From Bigelowiella natans CCMP2755 (Eukaryota; Protista; Cercozoa), in assembly GCA_000320545.1 (NCBI GenBank), contig ADNK01002821.1, forward strand, positions 7,976 to 71,975: 64,000 nucleotides of DNA. The letters run 5' to 3'. Below the pieces are notes generated by a model. That model had not been told where the DNA came from. It ran no database searches and saw nothing but the letters and a program-made list of their open reading frames with translations. Every line of letters starts with the position of its first letter. The stretch's first letter is position 1. This document shows positions 1 to 10,494 of the stretch, one piece after another. The translations under genes were made by a program, and so were the position numbers.

Positions 1-230
1 GGCGCGAAACTACTATCTTCTTGCTCTCTCACGGCTCCGAAACCAGCGAGGACAACAAGGCGCATACGGCGATGACGAGGAGGAGGAGGAAGAAGGCACG
101 AAGATGGGGGGGGCGGAGGGAAAGGAAAGAGCTGCCGAGATTAGAAGGTGATGAGCGTCGTTGTTTTGAAGAGCATCTACTGTGTGAAGGGGAATGATAT
201 TATAACACATATGGGTACAGTATAAATATT

Positions 231-269
<39 letters not shown>

Positions 270-1175
270 TGTGTGTGCGTGTGTGTGTGTTTTCCTGCGT
301 CTAGTATTTGAACAATCCTCGCATCGAAATTGGAATACCGTTATTGACACTGGCCGTTTGCTTATCACCCAGGCAGTGCCTTCTAAACCTTGCGACATGC
401 TACATCAAAGAGCGCCGTTTCACGGACGCCCTTCACTACTGCGACATTGCCGAGAAGGAGTATCACCGCGCAGGTCTGCCGCTACCCGCCAAGTTATCTC
501 TTCGCAAAGCCAACGCTTTGGAGGAAACAGGGGAGTTGAAGAAAGCGCAGAAGGCCCTTGCGAGCGGCATCAAGTCGGTGGAAGATGGCACGAACGCAAG
601 CCGCAAAGAATTGCGCTCTTTGGAAGCTGCCCGGGATAAAATCTTGGCGAAAATCGAGGCGACTGCGAAGGCAGAACGACGGAAATACGGAGGATTTTTG
701 AACCGAAAATGGGGGCCTGCAGTGAAAAGTGGGTTTCTGCTCAATAACGATGATAAGAAAAGAAAGAAAAGGCAACAACAGGAGAAGCAGCAGGAGGCGG
801 GGAAAATCGGCGAGGATAGTAAAGAGCCCATTCCGATGTAAGTAGGAAGGAGGGGGGGGGGATGTAAGAAAGCTTGCCAGCCAGCGGGATTTGCGATGAA
901 GTGTGCTGTAGTTACTTTCACTTTACCGTTATCACCCCTTGTTGCGTGGCGTCTCCTTAGGTATCCTGACAAGAATTTGGTTGGCGAAAAAACCTGCGAG
1001 TTGTGTGGCAAGAAGATGCCCTGTAAGCAGTGGGCGCGACACATGCTGAAATACCATAACCCAGATTCAACGGGTGGGTCTTCCTCTCTCTGCCCTCATC
1101 CTGTGTACTCATTGTGTTCAATTGCTTGGTCTAGTTGTTTAAAACTATCATCATGTATTGTAGATAGTGTTAATT

Positions 1176-1215
<40 letters not shown>

Positions 1216-1306
1216 GTGTGTGTATGATACTTATAAGACACATATGTGTCGAGTACACTTGTGTGTATGTGCACATATATATGTATGCATATTTATTGTA
1301 TGTGTA

Positions 1307-1362
<56 letters not shown>

Positions 1363-1496
1363 GGGGTGGGGGAGAGAGCGTATATTTAACTTTATGCGCG
1401 GTTCATGTAGGGGACTACGAATCATCAGATTCTGAAGGCTATCCAGAAGAGTTGACTTTCCCACCGCTACCGGATGGAACGGTCATTACTTATTGA
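1..1496 (+). CDS. 3' part of a TPR-repeat protein with a C-terminal C2H2-type zinc finger (exons ~<1-147, 373-837, 961-1073, 1411-1496)
   Basis: Exon 373-837 reads RQCLLNLATCYIKERRFTDALHYCDIA..KLSLRKANALEETGELKKA (TPR-like). The apparent stop at 839-841 lies in a GTAAGT donor at 838. Splicing to 961 gives MYPDKNLVGEKTCELCGKKMPCKQWARHMLKYH (C-x2-C..H-x4-H), then a phase-compatible last exon ending TGA at 1494-1496. Confidence 0.7.
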
Positions 1497-2077
1497 GTTT
1501 ATATATTTGTGTGTGCTTGCGTGTATGCGAATGTGTATCTGTGAGTCTAGAGTCAAGCTGAATAAAGTGCACGGTACAATTTTAACTGCTGGAGGGTCTC
1601 GATCAGCTCTGCGCGGCGACGATGTAACTGGGCGCGACGAGCACAAACACATGTACATGCATGTGCATGCAGATGGCATCTCACTAGTTTGTGATGCAGC
1701 TGCAACTAGCGGATGCAAACGTGTGGCGGCTGGGACATTCGCAACATGCTAGCATGACAAGCTAGCACAAATGCCTGCATGTGCATGTACGTAGTCTGCA
1801 CTAGCTAGCACAAGCTAGCCAAATTGCGCTTCACATATGTAACGGCATAATAGACACAGCTAGACAGCAACGGCTAGCTACGATACTTGACACACACACG
1901 TACACAAACACACACGCACACACACACACGCACACACACACACACACACACATCACACCTACACACACACACACACACATACACAAATAAACACGACAAA
2001 CATGATGGAACACGTGATGCGATCTTGACAAACCTTGTTCTGTGGCTGTCATCACCATGTACATGCCACATTTGGTA

Positions 2078-3778
2078 CTAGATCTGCCAAAGGCAGCATG
2101 ATGGTGTGATCACAGCGGTCTTTGAATGCAACATGTTACGATCATTTTGCGCAATCATGAGATGCAATGTAAATGAATGCTCCATTAGAGGCTGTGGACG
2201 AATTCGACTTTTCATTTTCCTTTTGGCGAATCTTACCACTCTTGAATTCTGGTTTCGGGTTGACTTGTTGATCCTCACCTCGCCCCAACTTTCGGTACCT
2301 TAATGGAGTCCGACCTCTGAATCGCCTCTCGACACATTTCGAAAGTGACGCGCTCCTTGCCCCCAAATAGCGCCCGAACAATGTGCGCAACATCCGCCTC
2401 TTGCATGTGGAATTCATGCTTGCTACAGCAGTCCTAGCAGCAGAAGCCATTTTTGTATTCACTCTCGAGGGGATCGTTGGGAAGCGTCATTTGCTTGCAC
2501 GCCGCAGCATGTGTGCTGGCCGTGATGTAGTCGCCCCCCCTCGCCAGGAAAGCAAAGCCACTTTCCACATCTTTTTTGCTCTCACCCGCACTCGTGATCC
2601 TTCTAGCCAAGTTCAGAATGGGGAGCGCCATACTGCCGTCAAAAACACTGTGCTCCGAACCCACCCCCACCTCGAGTGCCTGCAGACATCTCTGCAAAAT
2701 TCTCGCCTCCGAGGCCTGGGCACTAATCGCTATTTGATGGATAGTGACTCGGCGACTGCGATCAATGTCGATCATACTGAGCACCCTCCTGACATCTGCA
2801 TAGACAACTTTGTATGATGAGCGGGGATGAGCATAGCTGGTAGGGCTGCTGTTGTGGCGATCTTCTTCCTCCTCGCCCGAAAGCTGTTCGGCACTGCATC
2901 CACTGCTACGCCAGCAGTGATTATGATGTGCCCTTGGGATTTCGACTTATGTGAGGCATCTCCACAGTCATTGGATGAGGATGCCTCTGATGGTGCGAAG
3001 ACTTGATGCGGACTATGCGTTGGGAGCTTTGACTTCAGGCTTCTTCGCCTTTTTTTGTGATTGACGAACGCGGTGCTAATGATGGAGTCAACGGAAAGAG
3101 GAAACTCGGCGAGAAGATCTTGAAAGAGAATTGTGGGAAGATGACTGCCGGAGTGAAGGCGAGTACTTCGGGCTCGCTTTGGTAGAACACGGCGACCCTT
3201 CCAAACTCTCCTCCGCTGCGTTAGGCGGAGGATTGAGACTCAGACGGCTGCCCATGTTAAGAGCGCGATGTCACCGACGCCGGCGCCCTTGTTGAGGGGC
3301 TTGGAAAAGAGGAGGAAGGCCACACTCTGATGTGTTAATGACACTTGAGAGGAAGAGGTCAGGCGATGAATCTCCTCTTCATAGACCGACGCAAGCCGCG
3401 AATCGAGACCCTCATTGAAGGATGCTAAAAGCCGCACCCGCGACGGCGCAAGCAGCAGCCCCTCAGAACTCCCCATGTCCCAGCGAAAATCATCACCGCC
3501 GAGGGAAGGGAGGCGTCGAATCGCTCCTGGCTCGGAAAATCAATCATGGCTGCGTTCACTGGGCAATATTCCACTGGATATTAACGGGTATTACTGGGCT
3601 CCGATTGGGTTCCGACATCCAAGCGCTTTCTTTGACCGTGGCGCTAGGCGCAAGGCTCTCTGGAATTGGGAACGAACGCATCGGAAGACTTTCGGTGAAA
3701 CCAGCACAAGACCGATCGGTCAGATGCACTCGCACATCTGCACAAAATCGTGCAAGATCCAAGTGGGCCTCTACAACC

Positions 3779-3800
<22 letters not shown>
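2078..3800 (-). pseudogene. Coding-like but fragmented minus-strand region (possible pseudogene or indel-containing gene)
   Basis: Overlapping minus-strand ORF pieces in different frames (3476-3240, 2784-2434, 2462-2142) and a poly-T..TGTAG acceptor-like site near 3770-3809. No family recognised. Confidence 0.25.
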
Positions 3801-3811
<11 letters not shown>

Positions 3812-4063
3812 GTAGGCATCGTTGCATAAAACCAGGGCAAAACATCCCGAAGACAAGGCAGAAATACAGTAACGGCTAGCTAAACGGTCGGTTTAGAACT
3901 GTTTCCGAAAGTTCCCACAAATCCTCACAAAATGGCCGAATGCCATCGCTCTCAGCGTCGGGCTAGATACCAGTGATATCTATCATCTGCGCTGTCCTGG
4001 AGGCGAGAAAAGGGGAGGAGAAGAACAAGACGAAGAGAGAGAGAAGAAGAAAGGGCACTTGCA

Positions 4064-5980
4064 ATGGGTGCTGCAGGCGCTTCTGCAATGTTAGACGCTG
4101 CCAAGAAGAATGATCTGAACAAGATGAAGAGTTTGCTAAAGAAAAAGGCGGATCTTGAGGCCAAAGATGATGATGGTAGTTCAGGGTGAAATAGATGATG
4201 TGAATGGAAAAAATAGGTGTTTGGTCATGTTGCATCGTTTGTTTGTGCGTGTGTGTGTCTTTGGTAGTAGTGCTGATGATGTTGGACAGCCAATCGCAGT
4301 GTTTGGTCACATTGCATCCTTTGTTTATGCGTGAATGCACATGTGGTCATCGTGAATAGGTAATACGCCGTTGGCCTTGGCCTCTTTGAGGGGTCACAAG
4401 GAAACCGTCGAGTGCCTGATCGACGCGAAAGCGAATCTGGAGAACAAGAGTAATTACGGTGAGAAAAGCCTGAGAGTACGGGCCGTTTGTTGTAGCTCTT
4501 TGGTAGTAGTGCTGATGATGTTGGACAGCCAATCGCAGTGTTTGGTCACATTGCATCCTTTGTTTATGCGTGTATGCACATGTTGTCATCATGAATAGGT
4601 AATACGCCGTTGGCCAGGGCCTCTCGTAAGGGTTGGAAGGGTATCGTCAAGTGCCTGATCGACGCGAAAGTGAATCTGGAGAACAAGGATAATGATGGTG
4701 AGAAAGGCCTGAGAGTACGGGCCGTTTGTTGTAGCTCTTTGGTAGTAGTGCTGATGATGGTGGACAGCCAATCGCGGTGTTTGGTCACATTGCATCGTTT
4801 GTTTATGCGTGAATGCACATGTGGTCATCGTGAATAGGTAATACGCCGTTGGCCTTGGCCTCTTTGAGGGGTCACAAGGAAACCGTCGAGTGCCTGATCG
4901 ACGCGAAAGCGAATCTGGAGAACAAGAGTAATTACGGTGAGAAAAGCCTGAGAGTACGGGCCGTTTGTTGTAGCTCTTTGGTAGTAGTGCTGATGATGTT
5001 GGACAGCCAATCGCAGTGTTTGGTCACATTGCATCCTTTGTTTATGCGTGTATGCACATGTTGTCATCATGAATAGGTAATACGCCGTTGGCCAGGGCCT
5101 CTCGTAAGGGTTGGAAGGGTATCGTCAAGTGCCTGATCGACGCGAAAGTGAATCTGGAGAACAAGGATAATGATGGTGAGAAAGGCCTGAGAGTACGGGC
5201 CGTTTGTTGTAGCTCTTTGGTAGTAGTGCTGATGATGGTGGACAGCCAATCGCAGTGTTTGGTCACATTGCATCCTTTGTTTATGCGTGTATGCACATGT
5301 GGTCATCGTGAATAGGTAATACGCCGTTGGCCTTGGCCTCTTTGAAGGGTTGGAAGGAAATCGTCAAGTGCCTGATCGACGCGAAAGCGAATCTGGAGAA
5401 CAAGAATAATAATGGTGAGAAAAGCCTGAGAGTACGGGCCGTTTGTTGTGGCTTTTTGGTAGTAGTGATGATGATTGTTGGACAGCCAATCGCGGTGTTT
5501 GGTCACATTGCATCGTTTGTTTATGCGTGAATGCACATGTGGTCATCGTGAATAGGTGATACGCCGTTGAACTGGGCCTCTTACAATGGTCACAAGGAAA
5601 CCGTCAAGTGCCTGATTGATGCGAAAGCGAAAAATGGTGGGGAAAGTTGGCTACATATAGAAAACATAGTGGAATTATCTTATGATGACGTGATTGTGGA
5701 GAGAACTATTACGCCGGTTATTAGTACATTATAATGAAGTTAAAACTGTGTTTTCTTCTTTGGAATCAGATCGAATTTCTCTCAGACAGGCTTCGGGGAA
5801 CGGTGTAGAAAACAATGAGCAAATTTTAGTCAGCGGAACATCAGAGATGCCACAGCACAAAGAAGCAGGAAACCAGGTCACGCTGCCCATTTGATTCAAA
5901 AGCAAGCAAATCAAGTATTTGGAATAAATTTTGAAATCGTCAGCATCTCTAATATATTATTTTATTAGCCTTCTATGTAG

Positions 5981-6034
<54 letters not shown>

Positions 6035-6940
6035 TTATTTACTTATCTATCTGTTTATTTATATTTATGTCCATATATGTGCACTCATTTAATCGTATTA
6101 TGCATTATTCACAAATTGTTATCAACCGTCTTTTTGTGTATAACATTTCCATCACACTGCTCACACAATCAGCAACCATACAAAAGACTACTTTGCGCTT
6201 CTTTTTGTGTGCCCAACCCGGTACAGTATCTGACATTTGATGTGGGAAAAAAAAAAAAAAAAACAGAACTGCGAAGAACTTCTCCAAAGATTGAGCTCTC
6301 TGGGCAAACAGCAAGAAGGGCAAAGAGAAGGGTCACTGGTCAGGGCTTCCCCATAGCGTTGCCGATTGAATCGCTCATTTGTATTTGTCGCCTTATTAGG
6401 TTGCGACGCATATTTGTCACCGCGGGCGATATCCGACCGATAAATCCCACCTTGAGCGCCATGCACTGCTGTTTCGGCGAATGAAACAGGAAGGTCGGCA
6501 ATCCAAACCATCAGCAAATTGGCGCGACGGATGCAGTGGGATGAAGATCTATCATGTTTTAACAGACTCAGATGCCTTCGTGATCTACCTGGAGTGCGAT
6601 CAGGAAAGCGATAAACCGTCGCAGGTTTCGAGAAAGTCCAAAGATGAATTTTGGAGAGATCTTTCAGGAGAACGGGTGGAGACCATTCCGCACGTCTTTC
6701 AACTTCCAGCGGAGCAAGTGTATGAGAGGGCAGTCTCCAAACTTGGCAAGAAGAAGGCAAGAGCTGCTACCATGAAGTCTTTCTCATTTCAGATATCCTC
6801 AGTATCAATATTGCCAGGGAATCTTTCTGGAGCGTCGGGTCGCGGTTGGGCAAGATCATTATTCCGTCAGTTCCGAGGTGAAGGACCGATGTACTTGATT
6901 GTAAGGGATATGTCGCATTTCTCCACCACCCCCCTCTCAC

Positions 6941-6981
<41 letters not shown>

Positions 6982-9900
6982 AAATGTGCTCATCTGCTTA
7001 CGCTTTCTTGCAAGGCCTTTGTGAACTGGTGCATTGAAGGAGAGCAAGTGCTGAATGAAGATCTAGGCCTTTTGTCGTCACTATTAGATTGCGCGGACGT
7101 GGTGCACCACCGTAAAGACCGTAGCAAGTGCAAAGTGGATTCCTACATACTGGCTGAGCATGGAACCAATCGAACCAAAAAGATTTATTGGACCATTCAC
7201 AAAAAGTAGGGAAGCGTATGGTTTTCTTCCGTAGTCCCAATCGCAGAATATGCATGATACCAAAAACACACACACACACACACACACATACGCGCGCGCT
7301 ATTATAAACCTTTCATATAAATTTAAATATATGTATATATGTATATATATATATATATATATATTCACGGCACTGCGTTCGCTATATATTAGCTTGTTGA
7401 ATCTATAAATACAGAAAAATGTGTCATTATTTCTAATCTTATCGTAGAAACTCGCACGCCGTTCTGGCGTTCAGTGGATCCCAAAACATTGAGAATTGGA
7501 TACAAAACCTAAAGGTGATACTGATGAATTGTCCGATCGAGACATCCTTGTTGTTACTCAATAGCAGATGTTTTCATAATTTCATACAATTTACACGTAT
7601 CTAGTTTGCGCTAAGGAGCCCCGGAGAGCTTATATCAAAAGACGTGAAAGTGCACCATGGGTTTCTCGAATACATCGAAGAACTGGGCAAGGCTTTAAGC
7701 GAGCTCTACCGCCAGTGTGAGACCGAGCTTGCTTCGGAGCGTGCTTTTATTGTTTATCTCGTCGGACATTCTCTCGGGGGGGCTCTAGCAAGCCTGGCCG
7801 CTGCATGCCTTGTGCTGAACCAGAAGTTTTCCAAGATAACTTCAAAGGTGACATATTTGTTGGAAAACGACCTTCTCTCACCATTACGCGTATTGTGTAC
7901 CCTTAGGTTATGCGTGTCGTTACGTTTGGCCAGCCCTCGGTCGGGGATTCGGCCTTTGCTAAATTGTACAATGAAATAGGGTTAGGCTCGAGAACTACCA
8001 GAGTAATGATGTCAAAGGACGCCGTTCCTGACCTACCGCACACCTATGTGAGCTGGTATCGCCATGTCGGAACGGGGATATATGCGGATGCACTTTTGCC
8101 AAGGTTAAGAGTATATTCACCGATAGAGTTTGCGCCAAATCTGATTGAATTCAAAACACAGGAAGGCTCAGCGGAAATCAACGTGGTGGTCACCTCTGAG
8201 TTGGAGGGTCTGGAAGTTTTCCCACCTGCCTGCGCCGCACCTTCTTCCGGCATATAGGATGGCTATAGACCAAAAAACGCACTTGGAAAAAATATGCGAA
8301 GCTCAATCACCAACGGGCAAACTCTCTCGAGAAAAAAAGAAGACTAGCACTAATGGGGACCCTAGCCGAGAACCAATATTTGCGAAAATAGTTGATGCCT
8401 CCAAGAATGATAGCGAGGCGGTTCTTTACAACTCAAGACACATGCGGCAGCTCGGAGAAATGCTACGTCACATCCCAAAGGCCTCTCACCAAATGCCAGA
8501 AAACATCGCCAAAATTTTCAAATCCGACACAAAAGAAGTCGCTCTGTCATTCTGCCCCCCTTCCCCCGCACGAGGAGCCGCCACGGAAATGTCCGGACTC
8601 GTCACTCTTGGGTCAGGGCTCTACTACGAGAAGATCAAGAGCGACCTGCGGCGCGAACTCCATAGCCAAACAGACGAGATTAAAAATGAGGTGCGAGACT
8701 GTAAGCAGCACATGGACGATGGTTTCACACATATCAAAGGAACTCTTGCACAGATGAAGGAGACGATGGAGCTTCAAACGGTCCAGCTGTCTCATATCAT
8801 CAGCGGCCAGGAGATGACCCACAGACAGTTGGAAAAAATCAACAGTAAGCTCGACGAAATTCCGAGGCTAATTCAGAAAAGTGATAAGATGAAGCTGGCT
8901 AGGGAATACCGTGAGCATTGGAATAAGGTGCAGCATAGCTACAACAGAGCATCACAGCGTGGTTCCGACGCACATAAGTCTCTAAAGTCGGTATCTAAGA
9001 ACATGATTTTTCATATCAAAAGCGTGCTGCAAACTTATTGCCCGAATCCCGGTCACCAAATGCGGCTGCCTTACGTCGCTGGCTTTGTTTTCGCGTCTCG
9101 CGCTAGGATGGACGCTTTCCTTTTTGAAGCAGCTCCCACTCATAGCTACGAGGCCAGCCAAGGCGCCACCAAGTATGACAACTACCAAAGGTGGGACAAA
9201 ACGAAAGTGGCGGAATGGCTGAACAAGCATGACTCTCCAGATGTCCAGGACTGCTCTGACCAATTTCTACAGGAAGGGATAAATGGCAGTGTTCTGAAAG
9301 AGTTGAATATAGATGAAGATTATGACAATTTCTTTGCAGAGATGAAGTTCGGAGGCGTTGGTCGCAAACGGCTTCTGAAGAAGTACATCAAGTCATTAGA
9401 AAATAGCCCGGGAAAGGAAGTGAAAGAGGACCATGATGCGTTGGAGTTTATTCGTGAGGCAGCGAATCTAATCGACGAAGAGTTGTCCCATATAGCTCAA
9501 TGCTCCCGCTTCAACCTGGCTGAGATCGTTGAGCGACATTTTTCAACCATGACCCAGTTGATGTCCCTACGCCATGGTTTGTTTTCCGGACTTCGGAACA
9601 ACTCTCGCACCGCCGCTCTTTCCTCAAAGGAGGGCAAGGTTTCGGACTATGCCAATCAATGGCGGATTGTAGAGCAGGTCCGGGACATCGTTCTCCGCTT
9701 GGGGAAGATTCCCCGAGAGTGCGTGCGCGCGCTGGTAGAGGCTGTAGCTCCCGGGGCCCATGCTTCGTTTTTCGCGTCTCTCAATGTGGAATTCGAAGGA
9801 GAGATGGCAAGTGTGAAGCCAGCCGCAAGAGCGATTGACATGAAGCTCGTGTCGAAGATGGTAGACACTCCAGCGAACCGAAAAGCTTTAAGGGAATACC

Positions 9901-10494
9901 TTCAGGAACATCCCTATGCCATAACTCACTTCGACCTTGAAAGCTTGGAGGAGGTGGTCGTCTCTTGTTTGTCGCCCGGAATGGATGAAGAACTGCTTCT
10001 CAGTCTGATGCATGAAGATCATAAACGCTCTTGGGAAAGCAAACGAATAGCATCAAAGATAACGTCCATGACTACAAAGCACCCGCTCATTTGTTTGACT
10101 GCCCACCACCGTCGGGTCGACGTGGTTGGAATGATTCATCAGGAAGAGAATGGCTTGGAAGCGCTTCGAGCATTGATGCATATGAATGTGTTCTCTTCCA
10201 CGGAAACAGACAACAAAATGATCCAGAAAATAGTTGAAGACATTGCCCCAAAGCTGAATATACCGAAGGTCCGGCAAAAGCTTTAACTAGACCTACGAAT
10301 TCCATCTGCATCAATTTGGCTTTCATGCATGTGTGCTACTCGAACGACTTTGTGTGTGTTGATTTTGTTCTACTAACGAGCAGGTTCATCGAGAATTTTT
10401 ATGCAAGACAAATGGAGCCTCTATTGAAATGCGTCTACAGTTAGCTATGGAATATCTCGAGCTTCTCGCAAAGGTTTCACCAGCATCACAATGA
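4064..10494 (+). CDS. Multi-exon protein: N-terminal ankyrin repeat array - linker - class 3 lipase (alpha/beta hydrolase) - coiled coil - SAM domain - helical C-terminus
   Basis: Predicted exons 4064-4175, 4360-4458, 4599-4697, 4838-4936, 5077-5175, 5316-5414, 5556-5636, 5770-5876, ~6268-6338, 6400-6900, 7015-7205, 7448-7514, 7605-7847, 7907-~8200, ~8258-10268, 10384-10494, with compatible intron phases. Lipase_3 motifs: LAFSGSQNIENWIQNL, VHHGF, GHSLGGALASLAA, TFGQPSVGD, DAVPDLP. SAM-like segment WDKTKVAEWL..FLQEGINGSVLKEL..GRKRLLKKYIKSL (~9190-9400). TACTAAC branch site before the last acceptor. The ANK-to-lipase join is inferred, not proven. Confidence 0.7.
4257..5636 (+). repeat. Tandem array of ~239-bp exon+intron units (99-nt ankyrin exon + 140-nt intron), order A-B-A-B-C-D
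   Basis: Exon starts at 4360, 4599, 4838, 5077, 5316, 5556. Each unit reads GAATAG|GTAATACGCCGTTG...G|GTGAGAAA. A 478-bp higher-order dimer is visible. Confidence 0.95.

What the first reader, a model, noticed from the sequence alone, without database searches (positions are those of the whole stretch)
4064..5636. One-ankyrin-per-exon tandem array whose exons diversify faster than its introns
Seen: six exons spaced 239-240 bp apart, five of them exactly 99 nt (one 33-aa ankyrin repeat), all flanked by phase-1 introns, so any exon can be skipped, duplicated or swapped in frame. By hand count, exon A (4360-4458) and exon B (4599-4697) differ at 18/99 nt in 10 codons. Every changed codon is non-synonymous. 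The adjacent introns (4459-4598 vs 4698-4837) differ at only 7/140 nt. Most changes cluster at TPL[AL/AR/NW]AS[LR/RK/LK/YN]G[H/W] and the beta-turn [SNY/DND/NNN]G. Known: these positions include the ankyrin binding-surface residues randomised in DARPins, and one-repeat-per-exon diversifying arrays are described for LRR/TPR candidate immune genes of the brown alga Ectocarpus. Inference: a variable recognition module under diversifying selection, maintained by unequal recombination through near-identical introns.
Basis: partly seen in the sequence, partly recalled or inferred. Interest (0 to 1): 0.88.

Follow-up and report, generated by a model that had tools for sequence, protein, structure and literature searches.

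The report
Ankyrin exon array with hypervariable surface codons
A gene of the alga Bigelowiella natans builds its ankyrin domain from near-identical exon-plus-intron units, and these differ mainly at codons for the protein's binding face, a receptor-like pattern repeated in at least eleven other arrays in the genome.

Summary
Window 4064-5636 (+) holds a start exon, five 99-nt exons and one 81-nt exon. They start 239-240 bp apart, and each repeat exon has phase-1 GT..AG introns on both sides. RNA-derived contigs from two studies show four of the splice junctions.

- The array is A-B-A-B-C-D. A 478-bp two-unit duplication differs at only 3 intron bases, so there are four distinct repeat exons, not six.
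- A further intron (5637-5769) follows, and the transcript runs about 3.6 kb onward, probably in frame into the class-3 lipase/SAM gene (JGI Bigna1 143766).
- The intron is unique to this locus.
- At least eleven other arrays in the genome have the same one-ankyrin-per-phase-1-exon design.

Exon A differs from exon B at 18/99 nt, against 4-7/140 in the introns (Fisher 7e-5). In the sister arrays, hypervariable codons 1, 2, 3, 5, 10, 13 and 14 have mean pN 0.35, against 0.09 in introns. These positions largely match those randomised in designed ankyrin libraries.

Diversifying selection on a recognition surface is well supported. An immune role and exon skipping are not shown. It is a new variant of a known kind (Ectocarpus and Tetrahymena exon arrays, fungal NLR repeats). 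The scan had already flagged similar ankyrin and LRR arrays elsewhere in this genome.

The parts
3950..4063 (+). Transcribed 5' leader; the transcript begins upstream of 3950
   Evidence: RNA-type contigs of runs X15 and X19 cover 3950-4174 and extend beyond the laid stretch.
4064..4175 (+). Exon 1: ATG, 37 codons plus 1 nt. It encodes an N-terminal capping ankyrin-like repeat and begins MGAAGAS.
   Evidence: Sequence and translation. Weak Pfam Ank and Ank_4 hits. Splice joint 4175|4360 in X15.
4176..4359 (+). Intron 1 (184 nt). Its last 101 nt match the repeat intron, and it carries an extra partial copy of the intron core at about 4217-4255.
   Evidence: (matches at query positions 39-140 and 80-118).
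4360..4837 (+). First A-B block: exon A1 4360-4458, intron 4459-4598, exon B1 4599-4697, intron 4698-4837
   Evidence: The A-to-B splice joint 4458|4599 is in two RNA-type runs.
4838..5315 (+). Second A-B block, a recent 478-bp duplicate: exon A2 4838-4936, intron 4937-5076, exon B2 5077-5175, intron 5176-5315
   Evidence: It differs from the first block at only 3 bases, at first-block positions 4776, 4797 and 4812, all in the intron. In DNA run X1 the exon A and exon B contigs have k-mer depths of 191 and 155, against 81-91 for single-copy flanks.
5316..5414 (+). Exon C (99 nt), lying midway between A and B: 9 and 10 nt differences
   Evidence: Pfam Ank 22.5 bits.
5415..5555 (+). Intron 6 (141 nt)
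   Evidence: Splice joint 5414|5556 in two RNA-type runs.
5556..5636 (+). Exon D (81 nt, phase 1 to phase 1): a truncated last ankyrin repeat
   Evidence: joint 5636|5770. Pfam Ank and Ank_2 hits.
5637..5769 (+).
   Evidence: GT..AG joint in X15 and X19.
5770..5876 (+). Linker exon. The frame is open to TGA 5892-5894. The 3' end is not determined: candidate phase-0 donors lie at 5805, 5829 and 5877.
   Evidence: RNA-type contigs continue past 5800. Frame and donor scan.
6490..10286 (+). Probable continuation of the same mRNA: class-3 lipase, coiled region, SAM-like domain and an orphan C-terminal domain (public model JGI Bigna1 143766, ATG at 6481)
   Evidence: P0001 is 1080 aa, with Lipase_3 at 105.7 bits. 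Exon map. The RNA-type contigs run 3632 and 3645 nt past 5800, which fits 76 + 3234 nt plus a 3' UTR of about 322-335 nt. The joint itself was not observed.

Best explanation
This is the ankyrin-repeat recognition arm of an expressed nuclear gene of Bigelowiella natans. It grew in place by tandem duplication of a 239-bp unit, one 99-nt phase-1 exon (one 33-residue repeat) plus one 140-nt intron. The latest event copied a two-unit A-B block.

After duplication, the framework codons, synonymous sites and introns stayed nearly identical. A small set of codons was replaced quickly, often at two or three bases. These lie on the beta-turn and the first helix, plus a few in helix 2 in this array. The best reading is positive diversifying selection on a ligand-binding face, working on a scaffold that unequal recombination between the similar introns can lengthen, shorten or reshuffle in frame.

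The arm is probably the N-terminal part of a larger protein. That protein carries an apparently intact class-3 lipase, a coiled region and a SAM-like domain, so the variable arm would choose the partner or site where the lipase and oligomerisation module acts.

Shown: the anatomy, the splicing, the copy number, the excess non-synonymous change and the genome-wide recurrence. Inferred: selection as the cause, ligand binding, the fusion to the lipase, and any defence or recognition role.
For: - Anatomy and counts.
- Ankyrin identity. A gap-free register to DARPin and consensus ankyrin repeats.
- Transcription and splicing at four predicted junctions in two studies.
- DNA k-mer depth fits two copies each of A and B and four copies of the shared intron core.
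- A-B differs at 18/99 nt, against 4/140 in flanking intron (Fisher 6.7e-5). All 10 changed codons are non-synonymous and the 23 unchanged codons are identical at every base. dN over intron divergence is about 8. Clustering into codons has P=1.6e-4.
- Six of the seven family-defined hypervariable positions vary in this array (p=0.014).
- Eleven sister arrays have the same exon design. Mean hypervariable-codon pN is 0.347, against 0.090 for introns and 0.119 for framework pS.
- Within-array variability peaks at positions 1, 2, 3, 5, 10, 13 and 14. The ANK-N5C designed library randomises 2, 3, 5, 10, 13 and 33, described as a continuous binding surface (PMC4308713).
- Four-fold sites next to hypervariable codons (0.105) are no more diverged than distant ones (0.088).
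- No donor copy of exon B or of the intron exists elsewhere in the genome.
- None of the 18 A-B differences fits the TpA mutator pattern noted for this genome.
- Lipase context.
Against: - Only four distinct repeat exons exist here, so the window alone gives few independent events.
- About half of the A/B changes (codons 16, 18, 19, 21, 28) fall outside the canonical binding face.
- Introns show recombination (four-gamete failure). Part of the low intron divergence may therefore reflect homogenisation rather than youth.
- The sister-array set was filtered for units with near-modal intron length, which slightly favours conserved introns.
- No site-wise codon model was run.
- No ligand, no strain comparison and no exon-skipping isoform was seen.
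- The raw RNA run gave only 3 reads from about 6% of the run, so expression may be low.
- The ankyrin-lipase junction was not observed, and the public gene model starts the lipase gene separately at 6481.
Confidence: 0.7

Rival explanations
1. Concerted evolution dominates. The differences at the variable codons are old. Gene conversion and unequal crossing-over keep erasing divergence in introns and framework codons, and selection only stops the variable codons from being homogenised. The introns then look young without being young.
For: Intron variants are mosaic: columns 9 and 80 show all four combinations, and intron 5 mixes the types of introns 2 and 3. Whole-block duplication shows that recombination is active here. 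Several variable codons differ at all three bases, including steps that would be synonymous. This regime is the one proposed for fungal NLR repeats (PMC4986451).
Against: Four-fold synonymous sites in codons next to hypervariable codons are no more diverged than distant ones (0.105 against 0.088) and match intron divergence. Old lineages kept by selection should drag linked neutral sites along with them. Variable codons lie 3-10 nt apart, so conversion tracts would need to be implausibly short. In the window, the intron 3' halves largely track the tree of the exon that follows them.
Confidence: 0.17
2. No selection is involved. The excess exon change is a small-sample accident, or it results from clustered multi-nucleotide mutation or relaxed constraint in a recently duplicated, dispensable gene segment.
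For: Only four distinct exons exist in this array. Changes at helix-2 positions 18, 19, 21 and 28 are not obviously on the binding face. Expression looked low in the one raw RNA run.
Against: Relaxed constraint cannot push dN above the neutral rate, yet dN is 3-8 times intron divergence here and 2-17 times in the sister arrays. All reading frames, splice sites and framework residues are intact. The same positions vary in eleven arrays with unrelated introns. None of the 18 differences fits the TpA mutator pattern.
Confidence: 0.06
3. The A-B-A-B pattern is an assembly artefact: two alleles or a collapsed or expanded repeat. The true locus would have one A-B block.
For: The two blocks are 99.4% identical. 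Short-read contigs break inside the array, so none spans it.
Against: In DNA run X1 the contigs carrying exon A and exon B have about twice the k-mer depth of the single-copy flanks (191 and 155 against 81-91). The shared intron core has about four times that depth (337), and the part unique to intron 6 has about once (78). The introns after B1 and B2 differ at three bases. Both blocks keep frame and splice sites. X1 may come from the same strain as the assembly.
Confidence: 0.04

Closest known systems
Ectocarpus ROCO-LRR and NB-ARC-TPR candidate receptors with one repeat per exon (Zambounis et al. 2012, PMC3341825; also PMC11378527)
   Same: Each repeat is one exon of fixed length. The exons are frame-symmetric, so they can be gained, lost or shuffled. 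Repeat-encoding exons are under diversifying selection, and the authors propose a recognition role.
   Different: The repeat type here is ankyrin, not LRR or TPR. No ROC-COR or NB-ARC domain was found. No inactivated or antisense exons were seen inside the introns. Here the whole exon-plus-intron unit is repeated at about 95% DNA identity. The organism is a rhizarian alga, not a brown alga.
Tetrahymena 90-bp LRR exon arrays (Xiong et al. 2019, PMC6564038)
   Same: There are tandem intragenic exon-plus-intron units detectable at the DNA level, a single intron phase throughout, and characteristic intron lengths for each cohort of arrays. Unequal crossing-over is proposed as the driver. The Bigelowiella arrays likewise fall into intron-length cohorts of about 80-83, 140, 156-159 and 311-318 nt.
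   Different: Ankyrin with 99-nt phase-1 exons, not LRR with 90-nt phase-2 exons. No link to a retroelement was seen. That paper did not report selection at binding-face codons in the passages read.
[quoted passage not shown] 2014, PMC4986451)
   Same: Near-identical ankyrin repeats have a few positively selected positions on the concave face (inner helices and beta-hairpin). Repeat shuffling is proposed as a diversity generator, and lipase-type (sesB-like) effector domains occur in the same proteins.
   Different: The fungal repeats are not split one per exon. They sit C-terminal to a NACHT or NB-ARC domain, which is absent here. Repeats in the window array are 70-82% identical in protein (apart from the duplicated pair), below that paper's 85% criterion.
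Designed ankyrin repeat libraries (DARPins; ANK-N5C, PMC4308713)
   Same: The framework is almost the same: GHLEIVKYLV in the sister arrays against GHLEIVEVLL in the DARPins aligned. The natural hypervariable positions 2, 3, 5, 10, 13 and 14 largely coincide with the positions engineers randomise to make binders.
   Different: These are artificial proteins without introns, so this is a functional analogy only. Position 33 is randomised in the libraries but nearly fixed (Lys) here. Position 1 varies here but is fixed (Asp) in the libraries.

Membership tests
Ankyrin repeat (Pfam PF00023 / Ank clan) | 33-residue repeat matching the Ank profile at or above the curated cut-off | tested here: met
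   Single exons scored alone: A 23.8 bits and C 22.5 bits against a 21.1-bit cut-off; B 18.0 and D 20.6, just below. Sister exons align without gaps to DARPin repeats.
One-repeat-per-exon shuffling arrays (Ectocarpus / Tetrahymena type) | Each repeat encoded by one exon of constant length with symmetric intron phase | tested here: met
   Five 99-nt exons and one 81-nt exon, each with phase-1 introns on both sides. Four junctions were seen in RNA-type contigs.
One-repeat-per-exon shuffling arrays (Ectocarpus / Tetrahymena type) | Exon-plus-intron unit repeated in tandem at the DNA level | tested here: met
   Tandem Repeats Finder: period 239, 5.7 copies, 90% matches. Introns differ at 0-8 of 140 nt.
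One-repeat-per-exon shuffling arrays (Ectocarpus / Tetrahymena type) | Excess non-synonymous change at ligand-facing codons | tested here: met
   Pairwise counts and Fisher tests only; no site-wise codon model was run.
One-repeat-per-exon shuffling arrays (Ectocarpus type) | Association with a ROC-COR or NB-ARC signalling domain | tested here: not met
   Pfam on the downstream protein P0001 finds Lipase_3 and a weak SAM hit only. Flanks of sister arrays gave no domain.
One-repeat-per-exon shuffling arrays (Ectocarpus type) | Inactivated or antisense repeat exons inside the introns | tested here: not met
   The window's introns carry no extra exon. Intron 1 has only a partial copy of the intron core.
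Fungal NLR highly conserved ANK repeats | At least 85% identity between repeats over at least 100 residues | tested here: not met
   A against B, 23/33 identical; A against C and B against C, 27/33. Only A1=A2 and B1=B2 are identical.
Fungal NLR highly conserved ANK repeats | NACHT or NB-ARC domain in the same protein | tested here: not met
   No such hit in P0001 or in the array exons.
Fungal NLR highly conserved ANK repeats | Repeat-number polymorphism between isolates | not testable with these tools
   The short-read contigs available do not span the array.
Class 3 lipase (PF01764), for the probable downstream part | Profile match above cut-off with the GxSxG nucleophile motif | tested here: met
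   P0001 scores 105.7 bits on Lipase_3 over residues 209-353. GHSLGG can be read in the sequence.
Ankyrin-lipase fusion protein | A splice joint linking the ankyrin exons in frame to the lipase exons | tested here: inconclusive
   RNA-type contigs join exons C, D and the 5770 exon and run 3632 or 3645 nt further. A phase-0 donor (5805, 5829 or 5877) to the acceptor at 6490 is in frame. The joint lies outside the laid stretch and was not seen. The only public model is separate.

The most novel reading that the evidence does not exclude
Bigelowiella natans keeps a genome-wide, germline-encoded repertoire of cassette-built ankyrin binders, a natural counterpart of DARPin libraries. The symmetric phase-1 exons would be reshuffled over evolutionary time and also combined by alternative splicing, giving many binding faces per gene. 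These faces would aim effector modules, such as the class-3 lipase here, at non-self targets such as viruses or bacteria. That would amount to a receptor-diversification system in a rhizarian alga.
Probability: 0.12. Interest if true: 0.85.

Novelty: new variant of a known kind. Interest (0 to 1): 0.62.

Why it matters
Exon-per-repeat arrays with hypervariable binding faces are candidate recognition receptors in lineages with no described immune receptors. They were previously described for LRR and TPR repeats in brown algae and for LRR repeats in Tetrahymena. Intron-free ankyrin versions are known in fungal NLRs.

An ankyrin version in a rhizarian alga, found in at least a dozen arrays, suggests that eukaryotes reach this solution repeatedly. 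Its natural variable positions largely match those chosen by protein engineers.

It also gives a concrete, testable set of genes for studying host-microbe or host-virus recognition in chlorarachniophytes. Here the array comes with a plausible effector, a class-3 lipase.

Tried and rejected
- **Exon D read-through.** I first read exon D through to a TAA at 5733-5735.
- **Structured or snoRNA-like RNA in the introns.** An Rfam scan of 3000-7000 at E up to 1 found nothing.
- **Sister arrays sharing the 140-nt intron.** None exist in the 91-Mb assembly.
- **External donor for the exon B codons.** A DNA search found only this locus.
- **TpA-to-TpG/CpA mutator as the source of the differences.** 0 of 18 A-B differences fit.
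- **Exon skipping.** The E1-to-5316 joint in X19 rests on 25 nt that are identical in exons A and C, so it is not evidence.
- **Larger pieces of the sister arrays.** The analysis rests on the roughly 3-kb loci L014-L037.
- **Domains flanking sister arrays.** Six flank ORFs gave only C-terminal ankyrin caps and no other significant domain.
- **A longer public protein joining ankyrin and lipase.** Neither the 1.8-billion-representative search nor the word-index search found one.
- **Old-lineage signal next to the variable codons.** None was found.
- **Other long-period arrays in the window.** None in 12000-64000.
- **Papers on Bigelowiella ankyrin arrays.** None in the held library.

Full report
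**Observation.** An ATG at 4064 opens a 112-nt exon. Five 99-nt exons follow at 4360, 4599, 4838, 5077 and 5316, then an 81-nt exon at 5556-5636. The seven introns begin GT, end AG and interrupt a codon after its first base. Tandem Repeats Finder reports one array: period 239, 5.7 copies, 90% matches. Each exon translated on its own hits the Pfam ankyrin models, and exons A and C exceed the curated cut-off. Exons A and B differ at 18 of 99 bases in 10 codons, all changing the amino acid. The two adjacent introns differ at 7 of 140 bases.

The array reads A-B-A-B-C-D. Exons A1 and A2 are identical, as are B1 and B2. The 478-bp block 4360-4837 differs from 4838-5315 at three intron bases only. 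So there are four distinct repeat exons, and exon C lies almost exactly between A and B (9 and 10 differences). The intron variants are mosaic. Two pairs of sites show all four combinations, and intron 5 mixes the types of introns 2 and 3. Intron 1 carries an extra partial copy of the intron core. Both features are traces of unequal recombination between units.

**Expression and assembly.** One search for sequencing runs and one lay of reads were allowed. Contigs of two runs from different studies carry GT..AG joints at 4175|4360, 4458|4599 and 5414|5556, plus a new one at 5636|5770. These runs are labelled RNA only by guess, but they behave as cDNA. A joint from exon 1 to 5316 in one run rests on 25 bases shared by exons A and C, so it is not evidence of exon skipping. 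In a DNA run, the contigs carrying exons A and B have about twice the k-mer depth of the flanks, the shared intron core about four times, and the unique part of intron 6 about once. This fits the assembled copy numbers.

By the Nei-Gojobori count pN is 0.20. Every "synonymous" step lies inside a codon that also changed its amino acid, and the 23 unchanged codons are identical at every base. Eighteen random differences would fall in ten or fewer codons with P=1.6e-4. Two codons differ at all three bases: TTG/CGT at repeat position 13 and CAC/TGG at position 16. None of the 18 differences fits the TpA-to-TpG/CpA mutator that earlier notes report for this genome. Neither the intron nor exon B has a copy elsewhere in the 91-Mb assembly, so copying from another locus is unlikely.

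**Genome-wide replication.** A protein search of the window's own genome with exon A found 82 matches on about 36 contigs, many at regular spacing. In the roughly 3-kb loci returned, eleven further arrays have the same design: one 99-nt phase-1 exon per repeat, with periods of 179-182, 255-258 or 411-417 bp. Across 78 distinct repeat peptides the framework (GHLEIVKYLVDMKANIEAK) is almost invariant, while positions 3, 5, 13, 10, 2 and 14 carry 2.6-3.2 bits of entropy. Within arrays, pairs of repeats differ in amino acid 59-78% of the time at positions 1, 2, 3, 5, 10, 13 and 14, about 40% at positions 9, 12 and 17, and 25% or less elsewhere. In the eleven sister arrays the means are:

| Measure | Mean |
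|---|---|
| pN at hypervariable codons | 0.347 |
| pN at framework codons | 0.057 |
| pS at framework codons | 0.119 |
| Intron divergence | 0.090 |

Hypervariable pN exceeds intron divergence in 11 of 11 sister arrays, and whole-exon divergence does so in 10 of 11. Four-fold sites in codons next to the hypervariable ones (0.105) are no more diverged than distant ones (0.088), and both match the introns. So the introns are not unusually conserved; a few codons are unusually fast. Linked neutral sites give no sign that those codons belong to older lineages. One caveat: I kept only units with near-modal intron length, which mildly favours conserved introns. No site-wise codon model was available.

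**Where the variable codons sit.** A sister exon aligns without gaps to DARPin and consensus ankyrin repeats in the PDB, which fixes the numbering. The ANK-N5C designed library randomises positions 2, 3, 5, 10, 13 and 33 and describes them as a continuous binding surface on the beta-turn and helix 1 (PMC4308713). From memory, DARPins use 2, 3, 5, 13, 14 and 33. The natural hypervariable set is thus mostly the engineers' set, with position 1 in place of position 33. In the window array, 6 of the 7 family hypervariable positions vary (p=0.014).

**Gene context.** The RNA-type contigs that join exons C, D and the exon at 5770 are 3783 and 3796 nt long, and run 3632 and 3645 nt beyond 5800. They cannot be colinear with the DNA, because a 57-bp (TA)n tract and two further long dinucleotide tracts lie in the way. 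Downstream lies the public model JGI Bigna1 143766 (P0001, 1080 aa). This identifies the organism as Bigelowiella natans. The model carries a class-3 lipase domain (105.7 bits) with GHSLGG, a weak SAM match and an orphan C-terminal part; only four representatives among 1.8 billion proteins match the downstream 713-residue ORF that makes up most of the model. The frame opened at 5770 has phase-0 donors at 5805, 5829 and 5877, and an AG at 6488-6489 gives a phase-0 acceptor in the P0001 frame. That model predicts 76 + 3234 nt plus a 3' UTR of about 322-335 nt, matching the contig lengths. I rate the fusion, or at least co-transcription, at about 0.65. The joint itself lay outside the stretch I laid, and no public protein joins the two parts.

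**Handling of the spliced model.** All searches used single exons by reference. Joined translations were printed only in local scripts to check frames.

**Comparison with what is known.** The closest systems are four:
- the Ectocarpus LRR and TPR exon arrays (PMC3341825);
- the Tetrahymena 90-bp LRR exon arrays, with uniform phase and cohort-specific intron lengths (PMC6564038);
- designed ankyrin libraries.

This locus shares the logic of all four but is a member of none. It has no NB-ARC, NACHT or ROC-COR domain and no dead exons in its introns. It uses ankyrin rather than LRR or TPR, and its repeat identity falls below the fungal 85% criterion. No paper in the held library describes such arrays in Bigelowiella. 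Earlier notes of this scan had flagged a similar ankyrin cassette array and an LRR cassette array on other pieces of the same genome, as well as the ankyrin-lipase reading of this very stretch.

**Verdict.** This is a real, expressed, recently expanded ankyrin exon array whose binding-face codons evolve several times faster than neutral sites. It is one member of a genome-wide class in B. natans. Diversifying selection on a recognition surface is the best-supported cause. A defence role, exon-skipping diversity and the lipase fusion remain to be shown.

Noticed in passing
window 6481-10286 (+): The public model JGI Bigna1 143766 (1080 aa) has a class-3 lipase with GHSLGG, a coiled region, a weak SAM match and a C-terminal part of about 350 residues. 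The downstream 713-residue ORF (window 8145-10283), which makes up most of the model, matched only three other representatives (one of 157 aa) among 1.8 billion proteins.
   Followed up: partly
window 4064-4084: The predicted protein starts MGAAGAS, which fits the loose N-myristoylation pattern (Gly2, small residue at position 6). The ankyrin arm may be membrane-anchored. This is a pattern match only.
   Followed up: no
window 4217-4255: Intron 1 holds an extra, diverged partial copy (87% identity) of the repeat-intron core, followed by a short (TG)n run. It looks like the scar of a lost unit.
   Followed up: partly
L014, L017, L032, L033, L036 (array ends): Several 179-182-bp arrays end in the same C-terminal cap exon, of the form ...NG.TP.DLA..DELK.FIK... 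The 411-417-bp arrays (L015, L020, L024, L037) end in GQTALYWAN..GHNDIV.FLRNDEEIQKIRDEVEKKARQEAE, a cap followed by a charged helix. The arrays therefore form subfamilies that share cap exons.
   Followed up: no
L020: - strand 47-145 and 663-761: Two identical ankyrin exons lie 616 bp apart, with a 200-bp internal tandem repeat in the intron between them. This is another very recent duplication event in a sister array.
   Followed up: no
L026/L035 (contig C970): An ankyrin array with period 99 and no introns (open frame 144 aa) coexists in this genome with the exon-per-repeat arrays. It could serve as a natural control for the role of the introns.
   Followed up: no
window 3780-3809, 5982-6038, 6945-6979, 7315-7364: Long simple tracts (A30, (TA)28, (TG)17, (AT)25) sit in the leader-proximal region and in the presumed long intron and lipase introns.
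   Followed up: no
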